Origin: Adineta vaga
Lineage: Eukaryota > Animalia > Rotifera
NCBI GenBank assembly: GCA_021613535.1
Contig: CP075495.1
Span: 10,416,001-10,480,000, forward strand
DNA: 64,000 bases
Direction of reading: 5' to 3'
The notes beneath the pieces were generated by a model. The model searched no databases, was not told the origin of the DNA, and saw only the letters and a program-made list of their open reading frames with translations. Below are positions 3,092 through 63,532 of the stretch, in pieces (positions within the stretch are counted from its first letter, which is position 1; the number at the start of each line of letters is the position of its first letter). The position numbers and the translations under genes were made by a program.

Positions 3092-4644
3092 TTAATTTGA
3101 TTCATTTTGATTCTGTTGTGGTTCTTGTTGTTGTTTGGATAGAACATAATGATGAAATTTACTTAATTCACTGGTATTTTGCGTATAAATAATAGCTAAA
3201 CGTTCAATAAGAACTTTTACACAATGTGCACTAGCATAGATTAAACCAAATTTAAGAATTAAGAATCCAATTCCTTTGTAAAATCCTTGTATACCTTCAG
3301 TTTCTAGAATTGTTCGACAACAATCAAAAAAACCTAAATAACGCGTATTTATTGGTATACAACCAACACCTGTTTTGTCAAGATTATCCACAATTGTTCG
3401 TGTACCTTGTACAAACAAACGATTAACTATTGTTTCATATGGATAAAGTAAAATATTCGATAGAAATATTGAAAATAGATTTGCTTCAATACGTAGAAAT
3501 GATCGATTGACTAGATTAGGTATAGTATCAATAAGTTGACATTCGATATCATCAATTGTTTCAAATTGATGATGACTAGGCTTTCTAATTTGTTCTTGTT
3601 TATGAAAATTTTCTTCGCGTATTTTATAGAAATGATGATTGAGAAAATATTGTAAAACATGTCGCCCAATGAAATAAGGTAGACTTAAGGATATAAGATA
3701 CCATAATGGTAATGCCCGTGCATAAAAACCTGTTTTAATGCCTAATAAACGTTGAAATGGTTCAATAAAAATCGTTAATGGTGACCAATGATTATTAATA
3801 GTTAAATCCGATTGAATAGATCGAAGTAAATGTACTGAATACATTGGGATAAGAAGAAATGAACTGATTGATTTTAAAATAATATGTTTAATACGTAACG
3901 ATGGATGATTTAATGGAGCAATTTCATCTATTAAATTATCTGAAATTGTTTCTGCTGTTGTTAAGATTAGTGAACTAAAACAGCCTTTCCATAAAACACC
4001 ACTACCCTGTTGATATTTCATCGTATATATCATGCGAATCGCAGATAATGGTGTTAAATATGAACGTGAAGATTCACTTTGAATTTGTGCTTGACGTCTA
4101 AAAGATAGATTAGATATTGTAAAGTTCTATTGCATGCTATTCATAATTGACGAAGATTCGATAGTTACCTAAGTGTTTCAACGGAATAGAAAATCATATT
4201 TTCCAAAATCCATTTACTAATATTAAGTGAAACATCGATATTATGCTGTAAATATTGTTGACGTCGAAGAAAATAATGATCAATATGTTCGATTAATTCG
4301 GTTTCATCTTCATTATTTAATAAACTTGATGATGAATGAAAAGATTTTTCATGATCATTCTTTTTCAAGAGAGGACTTAGTAAAAGACTTGCTGGTGATG
4401 CTGGTAATTGTTGAATGAGACGACTTGGACTTTGTAGAAATGCTGGTAACGAAAGTTTTTGTCTTAAAGGTGACGATGATGAATTTCCATTAGCGCCATT
4501 TATTAATGAATTATCTGATGGAGATGAACGTGAATAATCTTCTGATATATAAGATGGTATACGAGCACGTGGTGACTGAAGATTCAAACCAGATGATGGA
4601 TTACTAGGTCGAAGACCCATATGGAGATCTGGATAGAGATTCAT
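3092..4644 (-). CDS. SLC25A46: Mitochondrial outer-membrane solute carrier SLC25A46-like; 2 coding exons (4644-4169, 4097-3092)
   Basis: Spliced product reads ETLRRQAQIQSESSRSYLTPLSAIRMIYTMKYQQGSGVLWKG and later LLYPYETIVNRLFVQGTRTIVDNLD...PINTRYLGFFDCCRTILETEGIQGFYKG. These match recalled SLC25A46 motifs. GT-AG intron 4168-4098 keeps the frame. Confidence 0.92.
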
Positions 4645-4757
4645 ATCATTTGTCTAGAATAATAGAAACAGAAAAACAAACATTTGAAATGTTTTTTTCT
4701 CACAGGAGCGCGCTTTGTATCTAACTTAAATTTCATATTCATTTTAAATTACGTCTA

Positions 4758-8465: not shown

Positions 8466-9425
8466 GAAATTTTAATAATAAAAAATAAAATATCACCGGA
8501 AATCGTTCAGTTTAGCACAATTTTATTTCTTTCATGATCTAGAAAAGAAATATTTATTTTTACATAGTTTACATGATGATTTTTATCAACAATGCATTGT
8601 ACTAATCATCTTAATCTTCAAGAATCGTATTTCATTTGGAAATAATACTCTGACATGAAAATTATTACGATGTATCATATATATTGGAATATTCATTCTT
8701 AAAAAGTGACATGATGATTGTTAATAGTAATAAGAACTTTTGTCCTCGAAGCAAATCTTTCGAACAAAAACAAATATTTCACGTAATGATGGTTGAATAT
8801 CTATGAAAACATGAGTTTTGTAACTTTGTATGTGAAGATATCTGAGACGATGATCAATCTATGTATAGATGTCCATTTTTTTTTCGCATTGAAAGAAACG
8901 AGAGAAAAAGAATATAAATTCTAATTCAATGTAAATTCTTGATTGGTTAAGTGTTTTATTTATAACAGAAAAACTATGATAATAGATAGATGACGCTGTA
9001 TTTGATAGAAACAACGAGGATTTATGTTATCTAGAAAGAAAATGAATTGGATTTTGTTTCATAAAGAAATATATTTAATGTTGAATATGATCCAAAAAGT
9101 GAATGTCTAATTGCAAAAATGATAAGGCAAGAAAATATTTCCTAACAGAATTTATCTTTTCTATCAAGTTGAATTGATAATTGTATGAATAAAGAAATAC
9201 ACGAACACTTCTTCGATATTCTAATATTTGTTTGATTATGTAAATCCTATATCTTTATCTTGACAATGGCAAGGTTTTCTTTCTACTATTAGCTCCATCT
9301 GTTCGAAATATCTCCAATCCTAATCGAAGGATTTGAAAGGTGAATCATAAATAAAATAAATATTCTATCAGCCACTACGAACTGATCGAATCGAGCAATT
9401 GAACGTTTGTGGTTGAACAGCAAAC

Positions 9426-12400
9426 ATGTCTACACATGAATATAGTCTTCATTTTCTCGTCAGTGAACTTGTTCGAACATCTAAGTAATATTGATTTATA
9501 ATTTGCGAATTCAATTATGAAAGATTGCTTTTCAGTGTTAATTTAAAAGGAGCAAATCTTGCACCAGAAGCAATTGTTGATTATTTCAATAAAAACACTA
9601 ATCAACAAGCGAATACTTATACACCAGTAAGATTAATCGCATAATTATCATATGTATGATATTATTTATTGACATAGGCTGAATTATCGGATGCGAAACG
9701 TAAATTATTTGCGAATTCATCTTCAGCAAATGAGTTTGTAGAACTTTATGATAGTTTAAAAGCACGACAGTAAGTTTCGTTTTTTTCTCAATTCTATTAT
9801 TATGTATCGTTTTTATGTGTTAGTGTACGAGATTTGGATTCAGTTATTGTAATTCTTTCTCATATTATTGATAATCATGAAGTAATTATTGTTGTTGCTT
9901 AATTCACTTTTGTAATGTCTTTTTATTTTCGAGGTACGAGAATTACTTAAAACATCTCGTTCAATGTCAACAATAATGACAAGCCCTCAACAAAAACGTG
10001 TTCATAATCAAACTCGACCAACTATAAGTCCAACATCAACAATGAGTAAAATGCATTCAGCACATGTTCTTGCTGAAGTAAGTCTTTTTAAAATATTGTA
10101 CATTCATTTATTAAATATCCAAAATATATAATTAGATGAAAGATACATTGCTTCGACCAACATCGACAATATCACAGGCAGGTTCAATTATTTCCGAAGG
10201 AGAAATTCGTCGTCGAGGTAAAGTCATTTTACTTGATTATTTTAATTCTTACGAAGTCATTGATATTGAAGATTGAACATGAGATTACTTTGTTTTACAT
10301 TCTTTTAGCCATAACACCATCATCTTCAACAGAATTTTTTGGTCGACCACCATGGCTCAATGAACGACTTCGGCTTCAATGGGATTTTTATCCAACTCCT
10401 GAAAAATTCGAACCAGTAAATATTTTCCTTGTTAAAATTACTTTCCCATAAAAGATATTGACTACCTGTAAAGGATGTAGCCATTGGACGTCTTTCTGTT
10501 ATGGAACAAGAAGCAATTATCGTCGAAGATCTATTATTATGTATGTTAGTAAGTACTGATTTTAGTCTATTCAATTACAAATGATTATAAATTCGATTTA
10601 ATAAAGGGTATCGAAGGAAAATTCATAAAAACACCATCATTAACAGATAAACAAGCTCAACGTTCGTTTCATATCGATCGATCATTAGGTATGAAGATTT
10701 ATTCTTTCGAATGAAAAATTTCTTTTTCATTTCGTTTTAGATGCAACTTTGAGAGATTTAGCACGACGAATGGTACCACTTTGTTCGAATCATTCTTTAA
10801 TCGTACGATTTATTGAAGGTATATCGAGAACTGCGATTTCAAAAAGAATTTCTATCGAAATCATCTATCTACTTAGATCGTTTACAATATAAATATGGTT
10901 TAATCAATCATGCTCTTGCTGGAGCATTGAGAGAAGTTGTTCAAGTAAGAATACCTACGGAAAGATAGTGATATGTTTATTATTTTGTATTTTATTCTAG
11001 AGATACTATGTATTTGTCAGTCAATTAGAAACTCAGCAGCAACAAAATCAATTGACATTACAAACATTATGGTTTCATACTGAGCCAGTTATGGAAATGA
11101 TGGAAGTTGTTGCCAATATCGTCAGAACATTGAATAAGGTATGAAAGAAGATCATTGACTACATGTAGATATGAGTAATTGTCGATATTTATTGAACATT
11201 TTTCGATTATAGGGTAATACTGTTGGTCGTGCTGTGCTTGATCTTCTTCATGAACAAACTTTGAAATTATCCGGTCATAAACAAGCATATGACATCTGTT
11301 TTTTTCTTGCTAAATCAGCCTATAAACCATATTTAACAATGCTTGAAACATGGATTCATAATGGTTTAATTGATGATCCTTATGGTGAATTTATGGTACA
11401 AGAAAATAAAGATATTATTCATCATGAAAGTAGTCTTGAACAAGAATTTAATGATAAATTTTGGTCACGTCGTTATCTATTACAACGTAATAATACTCCT
11501 ATTTTATTTCAATCCTATTCCGAAATGATTTTAAATACTGGTAAATATTTAAATGCTATACGTGAAAGTGCCTTTGATTTCAATGATGATATGAATATGG
11601 ATATGTCAACATCAATACTACGTATTGATAAACAATTATTAATGAATAATTATAAAAAATTAGAATATACCATACATGAAAAAGATCTTGAAGAAACTTT
11701 AGAAGAAGCATATAAATATGCGAGTGAAATTTTATTAGATTTAATTTTAAATAAATATCATTTAATTGAACGTTTTCAAACATTAAAACACTATTTTCTT
11801 ATTGATAAAGGTGATTATATTGTTCAATTTATGGATTCAGCTGAAGATGAATTAACTAAACGTGCACGTGATATTGATGAAAATAAAATTCAATCCTTAT
11901 TGGATGTTTCATTAGCATTAACATCTGATGATCAATATAAAGATGATGTACGAATTAAAATGTTTCATTATGATTTAATATCTATGCTTGAACGTATTAT
12001 TAATATTGAATCTTCAATGAATTTAAATGAATCCATGGAACATAAATTAACTGGTTTAGAATCGTTTTCACTTGATTATGATGTTAAATGGCCAATATCA
12101 TTAGTTATCAATAGAAATTGTTTAACTCGATATCAAATGTTATTTCGATTTTTATTCTATATTAAATATATTGAACGATTATTATGTAATGTATGGCGTG
12201 CACATAAAAATGGTGGACGAAGACGACGACGAGGAAAAGAACGAAGAAATATGACAAAACCAAATGGAGCTGCTTATTTAAGACATAAAATGCTTCATTT
12301 TGTACAAAATCTTCTCTATTATATGAGTTTTGAAGTTATTGAATCACATTGGCATGCATTTCAAAATAATTTGAAAAAGGTACAGACATTAGAGATGTTC

Positions 12401-59479: not shown

Positions 59480-60858
59480 AATTTTTTCAATAAGGAATGA
59501 AATCGAGTGTATGAAAGACTTTTTATTCGTATAGAATGATCATAAAAACCAGCATTGACAAGTAATCCAATAGTTGTATACTGTTATCAGTAAGTCAGAG
59601 CAACGCTAATAAAACAATCGAGAATATGTTTAATACTTGAAAGTTTCTTAGTTTCTAGTTTATAAAAGACATGAGTGTCAAGAAATCTTTTGCCTTTCAT
59701 AGCTTTATTTTGTATCGTTATCACAGCTGTTTTTATTAACAATTGACTGTAAATGAATCGAAAAAGTCATGTCTACTTTTATAATATTGTATCATGCATA
59801 TTCTTTATTCTGACTCAATCATAAGCTAATCGATATAATAATCGCTGCAAAATACAACAACAATAGTATACTTTCGCTATGGTTAACTTCATCGCCAATC
59901 TTTGTGTCAATAAAAATTATTCAAATTGAGAATCTTATTTCTCAACGATTAGTTTTACAAGCAAAGAAAGAATTCAATACACGAAAGAATATTAAAGCTT
60001 CATTAATAGAACCGTTTTCCTTCCGACTAATCGACTTATATAATATTGTACTGATAGAATAAAATTCTTATCAATAATTTGAGTACATTCTTGGAGACAG
60101 TATAGAACAAGACAAGAAAAGGAACTTATTTTTGGGCATTTCAATGAATCATTTCGAGTATATAGTCAATGATATCACATTTTAAATGTAATATATAATT
60201 TTTTTTGAATAATTTCACAAAATTTTTCATGATAGAGACGAAATCTTTGTTTTTCATGTGAGTTTTTCATTATAGATGTCGCTCGTGATATCTTCACTTC
60301 ATTTTGTTCATTAAAATATTAAAATAAATAAAATAATAATGAAAACAAATAATTATTTAATTAAAATTCATGAAAAACACGAATAATTTTCCAATTATTT
60401 TACTGGTAAAAATCAATGATTCTATTTTTCCAAGAAAAACAAAGCTAGCAATATACAATACAACTATATCATATGAAAAAAGAACCAATATGAATTGAAT
60501 AGTACTCAACCCATATTCTACGAGTAGTTGTTGATTAAATCGAACTCAATTCAAATAATTCTTTTTTGACTCACTCATGAGTTTATATTTATATCTCATA
60601 ATGCCTATGTACTTGATTCGAATGAACTTCCATATTTATCTCCCCGACATTTTTAATATAAATGTAAGAAAAATAGAATTTACGTTGCTTTTTTCTTTCT
60701 TTTAGATTGATATTATACATCTGAATTGTCGTGTGTGTGTGTGCGTGTGTGCAGACTCATACTTCACGGCTATAGACTTCGAAATTCAATGGCAGTGTGT
60801 GTTATTTAATAAATTATTTCCAAATTTTGTTTTCGTATTATTATATTTGGTTCAAAAC

Positions 60859-61909
60859 ATGCAATCATCGACGACAAATCATTATTTAACAGAAGATTCG
60901 AATGAGAATTATTTCTATGATGATAATGAAGAAAATCAAGAAGATAAACAGTTCTTGTTTCAATCACACGCAATGTTGAATGAACATGAAGAAGAGAAGA
61001 ATTATACTCTTGAAACAATCAATGGCTTGGGAAAAAAAAGTATAAAGATTTGATTCTAGCAAATGATATATTTGTTTTTAGATATGAAAAACGGTTTGAC
61101 CGGTTTGGAAATCAAAGGTCGAGTACGAACATTAAGTCCGGTTTTATTTTATCAAACGAATACTCAATATTTGATTATGTGTAATAATGAATTGAAATAT
61201 TTACCTCCAGGTAAATGTTTACTTCACAAAGCAATAGAGGCAAGTAATAAAATTTATCATCTGACATTTTAGAAATTGGTAATCTAGTCAATATTGTTTA
61301 TCTTGATCTGTCATTCAATCGATTGAAGACATTACCATCTCAAATTGGTTTGTACGATTTATCTTATCGTTTAGAACTACATTTAATTTCTTTTCTTGAA
61401 AACTTGAAAAAGTAACGTTTAGTAAAGATTTTCTTTTCTGTAGAAAAAGACAAAATGATGATTATTTAATATAATTTGAAGATAGCCATTTTTTTATGAA
61501 ACTGATTTTGATTTACTTTTCTTCTAGGAGATTTAATTCATCTGAAACGGCTTTATCTTGAATCTAATTGTCTAAAAAATCTTCCATATGAATTAGGCAA
61601 GCTGAATCTTGATGATCTCGGTAAAATCTTTTTCATTCTTTTATATATCTTCAGTTTTGTTTTTTGAAAAAAAAAAGGTTTAAGTAACAATCCACTTGGT
61701 GATCATATCTTAAGTTTATTTGCTCGACCTAATGGTGCACGTGAGGTCATGAATTATTTATATGAAAAATGGACTTTGATGTGTTCATATTCCAAATTAC
61801 CTTCATACAAAGTAAAATGATGAAGAAAATCTATTGATATTTTTTATTAATTATTATTGTTTAGACGACATTACCTTGGGATAATACAGAAACTGATTTA
61901 AATAATTAA
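60859..61909 (+). CDS. LRR-only paralog of the CCR4/CNOT6 N-terminal domain, no nuclease domain; 6 exons
   Basis: Exons 60859-~61039, 61082-61210, 61273-61347, 61528-61620, 61678-61811 and 61865-61909. They encode GLEIKGRVRTLSPVLF...[37 protein letters not shown]...LPYELGKL...GLSNNPL...PNGAREVMNYL, then a stop. Confidence 0.85.
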
Positions 61910-62301
61910 ATTTTGCTCAAAATTAATGCTTTCTCACGGTGCTACATAATTCAATACACACTGGAGTTATTTTTATTTTTTTTCTCTTCATCTTGTTTTG
62001 AAAAACAAAATCATACAATGGCCAATTTTTTTGCTGAAAATCAACAAAAGAAAAAGAAAACAAGATAGTACTTCACTAACAGTACTTCGATTCAATTTTC
62101 TCCGTTTTTTTTTCTATATTATAACATTAAAGAATGCAAAGATTTATTCTTTATGTTTTTTAGATATATTTACCTGCGAAAAAAGAACTTTATTTCAATA
62201 CGTAAGCATTCCATTCGCAATATCTGTTAACATCACACCGTATACTTCATTCTTCGGTTTTAGAATGGCATATTTATGAATTGTGAAGAAAAAGAATTTC
62301 A

Positions 62302-63532
62302 ATGCCTGGTGTTAATTTAAATTATGTAAGCTGATCTTTTTCGTCTTTAAAAGAAAAAATGGAAATATTAACTTTTCTTTCACTAAAATTTAGCATTCGT
62401 CGATTTCTGTTGATCAATCTTCAACATATAATCATTCTTCTCAACAATATCTTTATTCATCGATTCAATCACAATTTTATCCATATGAATCTCATTCACA
62501 ATTAACAAATTCTAGTGATCATCAAGAGAAATCGACTCAACGATCTCTCCCATTATCAACTAATTTGAAAAATACATCAATACAAAAAAAAACTGATTGT
62601 AAATCTTCTAAGAATTGTTTTTTTTCTTCCTCATCCAATCAAACGTGTAAATTTAGGGAATGAAATTGAAATAACTGGAAATGTTCGAAATCTTTCTCCA
62701 ACGTTATGGACATTATCTCAATTAACTGTTTTATATCTAAATGACAATCAACTAACGCGTCTACCATCGGAAATTGCTTGTTTAAATAATCTAGTCACAC
62801 TTGATTTATCAAACAACAAACTCAGAAATCTTCCCTCAGAAATCGGTAAGTTTCATTTGAAATGAATTGATGAAGAATATCGTTTATTTTTTTGAATGCA
62901 TATTTTCTTGTGTATAATATCTGTAACGAATGGCGGCAACGTCTCGTTTGCTTCACTGCATGTAAACGTCAGTTTTTATCATTCTTTTTTCTCGATATAC
63001 AAATCTGTCATGCATTATATTTTGACATTGTAAACACTGCCATCTGATTGTTTTGATTGATAGGTGATTTGATAACTTTACGTGAATTAAATTTAACAAA
63101 CAATTCAATTCGAAACTTACCATATGAAATTGGAAAATTATTTCGTTTACAAACCTTAGGTAATTAATTAGTTTTCATCAGAAAAATATATTAATTGAAA
63201 TGAAAATGATTCAATAGGTTTATTAGGAAATCCATTACCCAATGATATTCTTTCGATTTTTATGGAAACAAATGGTTTACACAAATTATTAACATATTTT
63301 CTGGATAATTATTCATCATCATTCAATGGTATTATAAATGAAAAACTGTTTTTTTTTCTTTTCCGATTGCCATGAGTTTACTTTTCTCTTCATCATCATC
63401 ATCATCATCATCATTTTCTTTTGTTCTCGCAATTGTAAAGTTTCAGAATATAGACTTGATTCTTACTACGTTCGTGAATTTCTCTTGTCAACATGGCATC
63501 AAACAAATGCAAACGAGAATTTCAATTCATCG
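62302..63532 (+). CDS. CNOT6: CCR4/CNOT6-like deadenylase subunit, 5' part (LRR domain); nuclease exons not seen in the window
   Basis: Spliced product KKTDWNEIEITGNVRNLSPTLWTLSQLTVLYLNDNQLTRLPSEIACLNNLVTLDLSNNKLRNLPSEIGDLITLRELNLTNNSIRNLPYEIGKLFRLQTLGLLGNPL...NGLHKLLTYFLDN is very close to recalled CNOT6 N-terminus. Confidence 0.85.
63390..63414. repeat. Intronic (CAT)n microsatellite
   Basis: catcatcat... run inside a CNOT6 intron. Confidence 0.85.

What the first reader, a model, noticed from the sequence alone, without database searches (positions are those of the whole stretch)
60859..63532. Tandem nuclease-less CCR4 LRR module directly upstream of CCR4/CNOT6: possible deadenylase decoy
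Seen: two same-strand genes, about 390 bp from stop to start, both encode the CCR4-type LRR domain. They share intron positions (phase 1 after ..I-G at 61347/62845 and after ..L-G at 61620/63159), so one is a local duplicate. The upstream copy is more divergent, has an acidic N-terminus, keeps an intact spliced ORF, and stops right after the LRR cap whether or not its last intron is spliced. Established: the CCR4 LRR docks the nuclease onto CAF1/CNOT7 in CCR4-NOT. Inference: the LRR-only protein could occupy CAF1 and exclude active CCR4, acting as a dedicated inhibitor or adaptor of mRNA deadenylation.
Basis: partly seen in the sequence, partly recalled or inferred. Interest (0 to 1): 0.8.

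Follow-up and report, generated by a model that had tools for sequence, protein, structure and literature searches.

The report
Conserved nuclease-less CCR4 LRR gene, bdelloids
Bdelloid rotifers carry a separate, conserved gene, just upstream of their CCR4 deadenylase gene, that encodes only CCR4's docking (LRR) domain without the nuclease. It may therefore compete with or replace CCR4 on its partner CAF1, though no binding or activity was tested.

Summary
The window is Adineta vaga chromosome 2.

Gene A:
- It has six exons (60859-61909) and equals the NCBI model I4U23_009028 (218 aa).
- It has an acidic N-terminus, a CCR4-type LRR domain and a short tail, and no nuclease.
- The downstream gene B carries a canonical CCR4 LRR. 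Its first nuclease (EEP) exon lies 3.8 kb past the window end and matches human CNOT6 residues 174-245.

Evidence that A is a real, independent gene:
- Orthologs of 208-228 aa exist in A. ricciae, A. steineri, Rotaria magnacalcarata, Didymodactylos carnosus and unnamed bdelloid contigs.
- All five introns, the stop codon and the gene neighbourhood are conserved.
- dN/dS is 0.06-0.14 in the LRR core.
- mRNA contigs of one ortholog carry the rotifer spliced leader and are fully spliced. They end about 190 nt after the stop, next to an AATAAA signal.

No equivalent protein was found outside bdelloids.

The decoy interpretation is plausible but unproven. The CAF1-contacting first repeat is conserved, but binding was not tested. 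RNA reads for A. vaga could not be obtained.

The scan noted neighbouring CCR4 exons before (s1-482721, s1-489645), but not this gene.

The parts
60704..60705 (+). AG of the predicted spliced-leader trans-splice acceptor of gene A (ttttag|ATTGAT)
   Evidence: The same ttttag|ATTGAT junction is conserved in A. steineri, Rotaria and A. ricciae. In ortholog mRNA contigs L016-L020 the leader ...CTTACCAAGAG is joined exactly there, while contig L015 keeps the genomic upstream sequence. CTTACCAAGAG followed by GT occurs 54 times in the A. vaga genome, against 0-2 for the control. For A. vaga itself this site is an inference.
60706..60858 (+). Predicted 5'UTR of gene A (153 nt), with conserved sequence blocks
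   Evidence: Alignment A2 of five bdelloid loci shows 67% mean column identity, with invariant blocks GATTGATAT, GTCGT, TCACG and AATGGCA.
60789..60809 (+). Conserved 6-codon upstream ORF (MAVCVI*) in the 5'UTR
   Evidence: The ATG, the length and the TAA stop are conserved in A. vaga, A. ricciae (two copies), A. steineri and Rotaria, reading MA[VL][CY][VI]I*. The ortholog mRNA L017 also has a short upstream ORF. No function was tested.
60859..61039 (+). Gene A exon 1: start codon and acidic N-terminus (MQSST...)
   Evidence: The residues match P0015. Net charge is -9. dN/dS is 0.2-0.6, so this part is weakly constrained.
61082..61210 (+). Gene A exon 2: first LRR repeat with the CCR4-type N-terminal signature (LEIKGRVRTLSPVLF)
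   Evidence: It aligns to CNOT6L residues 37-73. Twelve of the 17 positions 66-82 are invariant in eight orthologs.
61273..61347 (+). Gene A exon 3 (LRR). It ends in phase 1 after I-G, as B exon 3 does
61528..61620 (+). Gene A exon 4 (LRR, HLKRLYLESNCLKNLPYELGKL). It ends in phase 1 after L-G, as B exon 4 does
   Evidence: Nearly invariant in the orthologs.
61678..61811 (+). Gene A exon 5: last half-repeat and the CCR4-type C-terminal cap (NNPLGDHILSLFARPNGAREVMNYL)
   Evidence: It aligns only to CNOT6 residues 134-162 and CNOT6L residues 133-161 in the PDB. It was the query that found the orthologs.
61865..61909 (+). Gene A exon 6: conserved tail (TTLPWDNTETDLNN) and stop codon (61907-61909)
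   Evidence: The intron position, its phase and the tail motif L-x-W-(D/N)-N-x-E are conserved in Adineta (three species), Rotaria and Didymodactylos, and the exon is spliced in the ortholog mRNA.
62302..62325 (+). Gene B (CCR4) exon 1: conserved start MPGVNLNY
   Evidence: MPGISLNY lies at the same place in A. steineri.
62394..62598 (+). Gene B exon 2: Ser/Gln-rich N-terminus
62657..62845 (+). Gene B exon 3: LRR repeats 1-3
   Evidence: Pfam LRR_4 and LRR_8 score above their cut-offs. It is 94% identical to the second CCR4 copy on contig C5 and 92% identical to A. steineri.
63064..63159 (+). Gene B exon 4: LRR
63218..63328 (+). Gene B exon 5: LRR cap, with a phase-1 donor (AATG|GTA)
   Evidence: The donor is conserved in A. 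vaga B and C, A. steineri and Rotaria. Its phase fits the EEP exon acceptor at G000:C2:10483811 (L003:4811) and also an in-frame acceptor inside the alternative N-terminal exon. Which junction is used was not shown.
63447..63532 (+).
   Evidence: tblastn finds no counterpart in A. steineri or Rotaria at E < 0.01. It ends in phase 0, which does not fit the phase-1 EEP acceptor. The query is short, so this negative result is weak.

Best explanation
Gene A is a real, independently expressed gene of bdelloid rotifers. It is a paralog of the 5' part of CCR4 and encodes only three things: an acidic N-terminal tail, the CCR4-type LRR docking domain and a short conserved C-terminal tail.

Shown here:
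- It is intact, single-copy and conserved across four bdelloid genera in exon structure and gene neighbourhood.
- It is under strong purifying selection.
- In one ortholog it is made as a spliced-leader-capped, fully spliced mRNA of about 1.1 kb that ends about 190 nt after the stop codon.

Inferred:
- The first repeat, which CAF1 covers in canonical CCR4, and the C-terminal cap keep the CCR4 signature. The protein therefore most likely docks on CAF1 at the CCR4 site.
- That would give CCR4-NOT complexes with CAF1 but no CCR4 nuclease. The protein would act as a competitor, or as an alternative non-catalytic subunit, that lowers or re-tunes deadenylation.

My odds:
- Real conserved independent gene: about 0.95.
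- Binds CAF1: about 0.6.
- Net effect is displacement of nuclease-bearing CCR4: about 0.45.
For: Identity and structure:
- The gene model equals NCBI I4U23_009028 of A. vaga.
- Orthologs of 208-228 aa, all without a nuclease, occur in A. ricciae, A. steineri, R. magnacalcarata, D. carnosus and unnamed contigs.
- All five intron positions and phases, and the terminal stop exon, are the same in Adineta (three species) and Rotaria.
- The neighbourhood DUF229 - (minus-strand gene) - [GRIM-19] - A - CCR4 LRR - long N-terminal exons - EEP - Peptidase_S10 is conserved.

Selection:
- dN/dS is 0.06-0.14 in the LRR core and 0.13-0.24 overall, at dS 0.65-1.5.

CCR4 kinship:
- A single 135-bit stretch of the family profile covers CNOT6 residues 26-161. 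The best single stretch of any other LRR protein shown scores 56 bits.
- Exons 2 and 5 align to the N- and C-terminal caps of CNOT6/6L.
- The nearest ESM Atlas clusters are 'CNOT6-like'.

Transcripts:
- Contigs L016-L020 carry the leader ...CTTACCAAGAG at the conserved acceptor, have no introns, and end about 25 nt after AATAAA.
- The leader is a multi-copy gene in A. vaga.

Background from the literature:
- The CCR4 LRR is what binds CAF1, and CAF1 covers the first repeat (PMC8216464).
- A human nuclease module holding an inactive CCR4 was reported as inactive (PMC4613498).
Against: - No binding, structure or activity data exist for this protein.
- A is only about 49% identical to the canonical LRRs of the same genome.
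- It lacks the Trp that precedes ELEI in canonical CCR4, and the second half of its first repeat differs (LF-QTNTQY against LWTLSQLT), so the partner could have changed.
- The AlphaFold model was unusable (pLDDT 37).
- Expression is shown only for an unnamed ortholog, not for A. vaga.
- The strongest conservation is in repeat 4 and the cap, not only at the CAF1-facing repeat.
Confidence: 0.5

Rival explanations
1. Split CCR4. The LRR-only protein works together with the LRR-less nuclease encoded just downstream (own start MCSVTEP..., long basic Ser/Asn-rich N-terminus plus EEP domain). It would dock on CAF1 and recruit that nuclease in trans through its acidic N-terminus or its conserved tail.
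For: - The exons encoding the long N-terminus have a conserved ATG and are 55-73% identical across genera.
- Several annotations start the 853-902 aa nuclease there.
- In A. ricciae the canonical B-type LRR exons at this locus have decayed, with stop codons in both copies, while A and the LRR-less nuclease stay intact.
- A's N-terminus is acidic, net -6 to -13, and the nuclease N-terminus is rich in Arg and Lys.
Against: - There is no evidence of any contact.
- A's N-terminus is the least constrained part of the protein (dN/dS 0.2-0.6, up to about 1.2 against Didymodactylos).
- The second CCR4 copy on C5 has the same LRR / alternative N-terminus / EEP layout without any A gene upstream.
- LRR-less CCR4 catalytic domains are active on their own in vitro (PMC4613498).
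Confidence: 0.12
2. Changed partner. A derives from the CCR4 LRR but has taken on a new function and binds something other than CAF1, so it has no direct role in CCR4-NOT.
For: - The A clade has a long stem branch (0.66 changes per column), and A is about 49% identical to canonical LRRs.
- Repeat 4 (HLKRLYLESNxLKNLPYELGKL) is almost invariant within the family, which suggests a family-specific surface.
- The Trp before ELEI is lost.
Against: - The CCR4-specific first repeat and cap are retained and nearly invariant.
- Lys/Arg at the sequence positions I read as equivalent to human R65, K85/R87 and R110 (ELKYLP, NRLKTLP, CLKNLP) are kept. This rests on my own alignment by eye, with the human residues taken from PMC8216464.
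Confidence: 0.25
3. Alternative 5' module. A's exons are an alternative first-exon cluster of the CCR4 gene, normally spliced on to B's exons or to the nuclease exons.
For: - A lies on the same strand, 392 bp upstream of B.
- The phase-0 donor of A exon 5 would fit the phase-0 acceptor of B exon 2.
Against: - The ortholog mRNAs use the terminal exon with its stop codon and end about 190 nt later.
- The terminal exon and the tail motif are conserved.
- B has its own conserved start exon.
- The A exon 5 donor (phase 0) does not fit the phase-1 EEP acceptor.
- All five NCBI annotations keep A separate.
Confidence: 0.03
4. Decaying duplicate or annotation artefact with no function.
For: It is a partial tandem copy, and its origin cannot be dated.
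Against: - The reading frame is intact in at least five species.
- dN/dS is 0.06-0.14 in the LRR core.
- Splice sites, the 5'UTR acceptor and the upstream ORF are conserved.
- A spliced mRNA exists.
- By contrast, a truly decaying LRR is visible next door in A. ricciae.
Confidence: 0.02

Closest known systems
CCR4 / CNOT6 / CNOT6L (Drosophila twin), the EEP-type deadenylase subunit of CCR4-NOT
   Same: The LRR domain is of the same type from N-cap to C-cap: one 135-bit stretch against CNOT6 residues 26-161. It has four and a half repeats, a first repeat lacking the consensus Asn, and the cap GNPL...IL.L....G...L.NYL. A shares two phase-1 intron positions with the CCR4 genes of the same genome.
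   Different: There is no EEP nuclease. The protein ends 27 residues after the cap with its own conserved tail. It has an acidic N-terminus, about 49% identity to the canonical LRR, and is a separate gene with its own trans-splice acceptor and stop codon.
Engineered or mutant CCR4-NOT subunits with dominant-negative effects (catalytically dead CCR4 in the human nuclease module, PMC4613498; Drosophila CAF1 mutant that sequesters CCR4, cited in PMC4032980)
   Same: The logic is the same: a subunit that keeps the docking surface but lacks activity can lower deadenylation by occupying the partner.
   Different: Those are laboratory constructs. This is a natural gene kept by selection across a whole animal class. 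Its effect is untested.
Short 'CNOT6-like' / 'CNO6L fragment' protein clusters of arthropods in the ESM Atlas (171-189 aa, 74-96 members)
   Same: They are the nearest clusters by language-model features (score 0.98) and also contain only the LRR.
   Different: Their nature was not examined. They may be truncated gene models or short isoforms of the normal CCR4 gene rather than separate genes.
Generic SHOC2 / RSU1-type LRR proteins (the automatic UniRef name of the orthologs is 'Disease resistance R13L4/SHOC-2-like LRR domain-containing protein')
   Same: They share the 23-residue LRR repeat type, so the summed scores are high.
   Different: Those matches are repeat-by-repeat, at most 56 bits per stretch in the alignments shown, and lack the CCR4 caps. 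The automatic name is uninformative.

Membership tests
CCR4/CNOT6 deadenylase (gene A) | CCR4-type LRR domain (first repeat with ELEI-G-VR-LS, 4.5 repeats, C-cap GNPL...NYL) | tested here: met
   (E = 2e-38, one stretch covering CNOT6 residues 26-161).
CCR4/CNOT6 deadenylase (gene A) | EEP (Exo_endo_phos) nuclease domain on the same polypeptide | tested here: not met
   The stop codon is at 61907-61909 and the product is 218 aa. Orthologs are 208-228 aa with LRR Pfam families only. The ortholog mRNA ends about 190 nt after the stop. A is therefore a paralog of the LRR module, not a deadenylase.
CCR4/CNOT6 deadenylase (gene A) | Binds CAF1/CNOT7 through the LRR | not testable with these tools
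   Only sequence conservation of the first repeat could be examined. The monomer model failed, and no complex prediction is available.
CCR4/CNOT6 deadenylase (gene B, downstream) | LRR exons followed by EEP exons of CCR4 type | tested here: met
   LRR. The first EEP exon at L003:4811-5034 matches CNOT6 residues 174-245 at E = 2e-29. Orthologous gene models carry PF03372.
CCR4/CNOT6 deadenylase (gene B, downstream) | LRR and EEP joined in one mRNA | tested here: inconclusive
   The phases fit. One A. steineri annotation joins them into 1082 aa, while others split them into a 227-232 aa LRR gene and an 853-902 aa nuclease gene. No reads were available.
Processed or decaying pseudogene | Frame disruptions, loss of splice sites, dN/dS near 1 | tested here: not met
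Spliced-leader trans-spliced bdelloid mRNA | Non-genomic leader joined at an AG acceptor; leader encoded by multi-copy genes with a GT donor | tested here: met
   Met for the ortholog P0018. For A. vaga only the conserved acceptor is seen. The published leader sequence is recalled from memory (Pouchkina-Stantcheva and Tunnacliffe 2005) and was not found in the paper library.

The most novel reading that the evidence does not exclude
Bdelloid rotifers have evolved a dedicated, translationally controlled CCR4-NOT subunit that is a 'headless' CCR4. Translational control is suggested by the conserved upstream ORF. The protein would cap CAF1, either switching the complex to a CCR4-free state with altered handling of poly(A) tails, or serving as the detachable docking half of a split CCR4 whose nuclease half is the LRR-less enzyme encoded next door. 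That would be a natural case of regulating deadenylation by subunit mimicry, possibly tied to mRNA storage during desiccation and dormancy.
Probability: 0.2. Interest if true: 0.75.

Novelty: new variant of a known kind. Interest (0 to 1): 0.55.

Why it matters
CCR4-NOT is the main mRNA deadenylase of eukaryotes. How the balance between its two nucleases is set is an open question.

A naturally selected protein consisting only of the CCR4 docking domain would be a ready-made tool and a test case. If it binds CAF1, it shows that animals can regulate deadenylation by competing for the CCR4 site, and it gives a simple reagent for producing CAF1-only complexes in vivo.

The locus also shows CCR4 evolving in modules: an LRR-only gene, canonical LRR exons, and alternative LRR-less N-terminal exons. 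One species (A. ricciae) has lost the canonical LRR at this locus. The family is so far annotated only as 'hypothetical' or 'SHOC-2-like'. I found no paper on it in the library that was searched.

Tried and rejected
- **Structure.** AlphaFold2 on the 8-sequence alignment gave pLDDT 37. It was unusable, and no fold search was run.
- **A. vaga annotation.** The look-up of encoding contigs for the A. vaga protein itself returned nothing, because records of the window's own genome are left out. The A. vaga annotation of gene B could therefore not be read.
- **Single-exon Pfam scans.** These gave only generic, sub-threshold LRR hits for A.
- **Second A copy.** None was found. A is single-copy in the genome and absent upstream of the C5 CCR4 copy.
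- **Dating the duplication.** The tree puts A outside metazoan CCR4 with modest support (81/88) and a long-branch warning. The AU test does not reject A plus bdelloid CCR4 as one clade (p = 0.25). The origin is unresolved.
- **5'UTR hairpin.** A GUCGUG/CACGRC stem is predicted, but no compensatory changes support it.
- **Published leader sequence.** A literature check did not find it. I used the genome copy count instead.
- **Joined models.** Exons were searched one by one by reference, and later the database's own records (P0015 and others) were used. Exons were joined only inside local scripts, for translation, dN/dS and the tree.
Full report
**What is there**

The window is G000:C2:10416001-10480000 of a 100.8-Mb genome in six contigs.

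I rebuilt both genes from the sequence. Gene A has six exons: 60859-61039, 61082-61210, 61273-61347, 61528-61620, 61678-61811 and 61865-61909. All have GT-AG introns of 42-180 nt. The spliced product is 218 aa. It is identical to the NCBI model I4U23_009028, here P0015.

Gene B starts 392 bp after A's stop. Its LRR exons are 62302-62325, 62394-62598, 62657-62845, 63064-63159 and 63218-63328.

The stop is also as stated: with the last intron retained the frame ends at 61818-61820, and spliced it ends at 61907-61909. A's N-terminus has net charge -9 over 68 residues.

Exons were searched singly by reference, and later the database's own records were used. Joining was done only inside local scripts.

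**Is A a CCR4-type LRR?**

Single exons give only weak generic LRR hits in Pfam. Exon 2, however, aligns to CNOT6L residues 37-73, the first repeat (LEI-GRVR-LS--L). Exon 5 matches nothing in the PDB except the C-terminal cap of CNOT6 and CNOT6L.

A profile of eight orthologs matches human CNOT6 in one continuous stretch (profile 49-183 against residues 26-161, 135 bits, E = 2e-38). Long LRR proteins such as SHOC2 score higher only by adding many repeat-sized stretches of at most 56 bits each. The nearest ESM Atlas clusters are named CNOT6-like. So A is a CCR4-type LRR, and it has no nuclease.

**Is B really CCR4?**

Beyond the window end there is no EEP exon for 3.8 kb. At L003:4811 (C2:10483811) an exon begins that matches CNOT6 residues 174-245 at E = 2e-29. 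That is the start of the nuclease domain. Further EEP exons follow, up to about L003:6480.

The acceptor of this exon is phase 1, and so is the donor of B exon 5 (63328). I do not accept it.

In the 5.5-kb interval between the LRR and EEP exons lie two conserved open frames (L003:3078-3509 and about 3727-4699). They have their own conserved ATG (MCSVTEP...) and are 55-73% identical to other bdelloids. This is what another first-stage note (s1-482721) described. Annotations in related species start an 853-902 aa nuclease protein there, or in one case join LRR, this segment and EEP into 1082 aa. Which junctions are used could not be settled without reads.

A second CCR4 copy on contig C5 has the same layout of LRR, a shorter alternative N-terminus and EEP. 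Its LRR is 83% identical to B's. It has no copy of A upstream; the GRIM-19 gene lies there instead. A itself is single-copy.

**Conservation of A**

A whole-library HMMER search with exon 5 found seven proteins, all 76-86% identical. The longest is a 208-aa protein of A. ricciae.

Searches with that protein, and with a family profile, found full-length orthologs of 208-228 aa in:
- A. vaga
- A. ricciae (two copies)
- A. steineri
- Rotaria magnacalcarata
- Didymodactylos carnosus (two copies)
- unnamed metagenomic and Logan contigs

After these hits, scores fall from at least 327 bits to fragments of the same family and then to generic LRR proteins. The only other CCR4-like hits were N-terminal fragments of ordinary fungal and animal CCR4 genes that read on into introns. 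Within the limits of those searches (length window, word filter), the family is confined to bdelloids.

Exact spliced mapping shows the same six exons, with identical phases and core exon lengths (129, 75, 93 and 134-137 nt), in three Adineta species and in Rotaria. This includes the short terminal exon with the stop codon. The tail motif L-x-W-(D/N)-N-x-E-x-D is kept as far as Didymodactylos.

The neighbourhood is also kept: DUF229 gene, a minus-strand gene, GRIM-19 (missing on A. vaga C2), A, CCR4 LRR exons, alternative N-terminal exons, EEP exons, Peptidase_S10 genes.

Nei-Gojobori dN/dS values:

| Region | dN/dS |
|---|---|
| LRR core | 0.06-0.14, at dS 0.65-1.5 |
| Whole protein | 0.13-0.24 |
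| Acidic N-terminus | 0.2-0.6 |

For comparison, the canonical LRR of gene B gives 0.10-0.13. So A is as constrained as the real CCR4 LRR.

**Transcript evidence**

However, the ortholog P0018 (227 aa, 62% identical to the A. vaga protein by BLASTP) is encoded without introns on ten short contigs from five JGI samples and two SRA runs.

Five of these contigs are 1082-1093 nt long. Each begins with up to 11 nt...CTTACCAAGAG, that are not in the genomic version. That leader is joined exactly at an AG acceptor (ttttag|ATTGAT). A sixth contig keeps the genomic upstream sequence and runs back into the GRIM-19 coding region.

CTTACCAAGAG followed by GT occurs 54 times in the A. vaga genome, against 0-2 for the control, mostly as divergent pairs. 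In the one copy I read, it sits at the end of ...ACTTATTACAACTTACCAAGAG|GTAAAT. This fits the rotifer spliced leader as I recall it from Pouchkina-Stantcheva and Tunnacliffe 2005. I could not find that sequence in the paper library.

Four of the five contigs end within a few bases of each other, about 25 nt after an AATAAA and about 190 nt after the stop codon. The fifth (L016) breaks off about 18 nt earlier in sequencing adapter.

This is a mature, independent mRNA for an LRR-only protein. The same acceptor and the following ATTGAT are conserved in A. vaga (60704-60706), A. steineri, Rotaria and A. ricciae.

**Origin**

A is about 49% identical to both CCR4 copies of its genome. By my own count on the alignment, it is about as far from human CNOT6L in the first repeats.

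In a maximum-likelihood tree with fungal CCR4 as the outer group, the LRR-only clade has a long stem (0.66). It stands beside a modestly supported (81/88) group made of two other animal CCR4 fragments plus bdelloid CCR4, and the tool warned of long-branch effects. An AU test does not reject a tree in which A and bdelloid CCR4 form one clade (p = 0.25).

The tandem position and two shared intron positions favour a local duplication in the rotifer lineage followed by fast divergence. The date is open.

**How it most likely works**

From the literature:
- The CCR4 LRR is the CAF1-binding domain.
- In the human complex, CAF1 covers the hydrophobic face of the first repeat and pairs a strand with it.
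- The LRR also carries a basic patch that helps RNA binding (PMC8216464).
- A human nuclease module containing catalytically dead CCR4 was reported as inactive (PMC4613498).

In the A family, the first repeat is nearly invariant: 12 of the 17 positions 66-82. It keeps the CCR4 signature. Lys/Arg at the positions that I align by eye with the human basic patch are kept.

I therefore think the protein most likely docks on CAF1 in place of CCR4, giving complexes without the CCR4 nuclease. This is inference.

Three observations complicate the simple decoy reading:
- A is strongly diverged from the canonical LRR.
- Repeat 4 and the cap are the most invariant parts.
- In A. ricciae the canonical LRR exons at this locus have decayed (stop codons in both copies), while A and the LRR-less nuclease remain. 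That leaves room for a 'split CCR4' reading, in which A serves the neighbouring nuclease.

**Verdict**

The gene is real, conserved and expressed in at least one relative. It is a new, apparently bdelloid-specific family of nuclease-less CCR4 LRR proteins, annotated so far only as hypothetical. The decoy mechanism is reasonable but untested.

Noticed in passing
window 60789-60809: The 5'UTR of gene A holds a 6-codon upstream ORF. Its ATG, length and TAA stop are conserved in A. vaga, A. ricciae, A. steineri and Rotaria, reading MA[VL][CY][VI]I*. The more distant ortholog mRNA (L017) also has a short upstream ORF. This may reflect translational control.
   Followed up: partly
window 60738-60782: A possible 5'UTR hairpin, GUCGUG ... 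CACGRC, is conserved in five loci. Only U-A to U-G changes are seen and there is no compensatory pair, so the support is weak.
   Followed up: yes
L015:1-1533 (Logan SRR5248462): One RNA-derived contig joins the 3' end of the GRIM-19 (NDUFA13) coding region, the 350-nt spacer and the fully spliced LRR-only gene. It may be a polycistronic precursor resolved by spliced-leader trans-splicing, although operons have not been reported in rotifers (PMC7986045). An assembly chimera is not excluded.
   Followed up: no
L005:11505-11668 and L006:11507-11728 (A. ricciae): The canonical CCR4 LRR exons between the LRR-only gene and the nuclease exons are decayed in both A. ricciae copies (in-frame stops, 43-58% identity). 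They are intact and 85-92% identical in A. steineri and Rotaria.
   Followed up: partly
L003:3078-3509 and 3727-4699 (G000:C2:10482078-10483699); L004:6627-7340 on C5: Conserved coding exons with their own ATG (MCSVTEP / MCSFTES) lie between the LRR and EEP exons of both CCR4 copies. They would give an LRR-less nuclease with a long Ser/Asn/Arg-rich N-terminus. In Adineta an in-frame TTCAG acceptor right after the ATG could also join them to the LRR exons. Rotaria lacks that AG.
   Followed up: partly
G000, e.g. C1:1639465-1639645, C5:9884354-9925971: There are 54 copies of CTTACCAAGAGGT, mostly as divergent pairs about 168 bp apart and clustered on C5 and C2. They are presumably spliced-leader RNA genes arranged head to head.
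   Followed up: partly
L003:7029-8450 and 8854-9879 (minus strand): Tandem serine carboxypeptidase (Peptidase_S10) genes lie just downstream of CCR4. They are apparently intronless and are syntenic in all bdelloid loci examined.
   Followed up: no
window about 60000-60700 versus L004:3868-4466: GRIM-19 lies directly upstream of the LRR-only gene in A. ricciae's relatives (A. steineri, Rotaria, Didymodactylos). On A. vaga C2 it is missing there and is found instead upstream of the C5 CCR4 copy. This looks like reciprocal loss after the genome duplication.
   Followed up: partly
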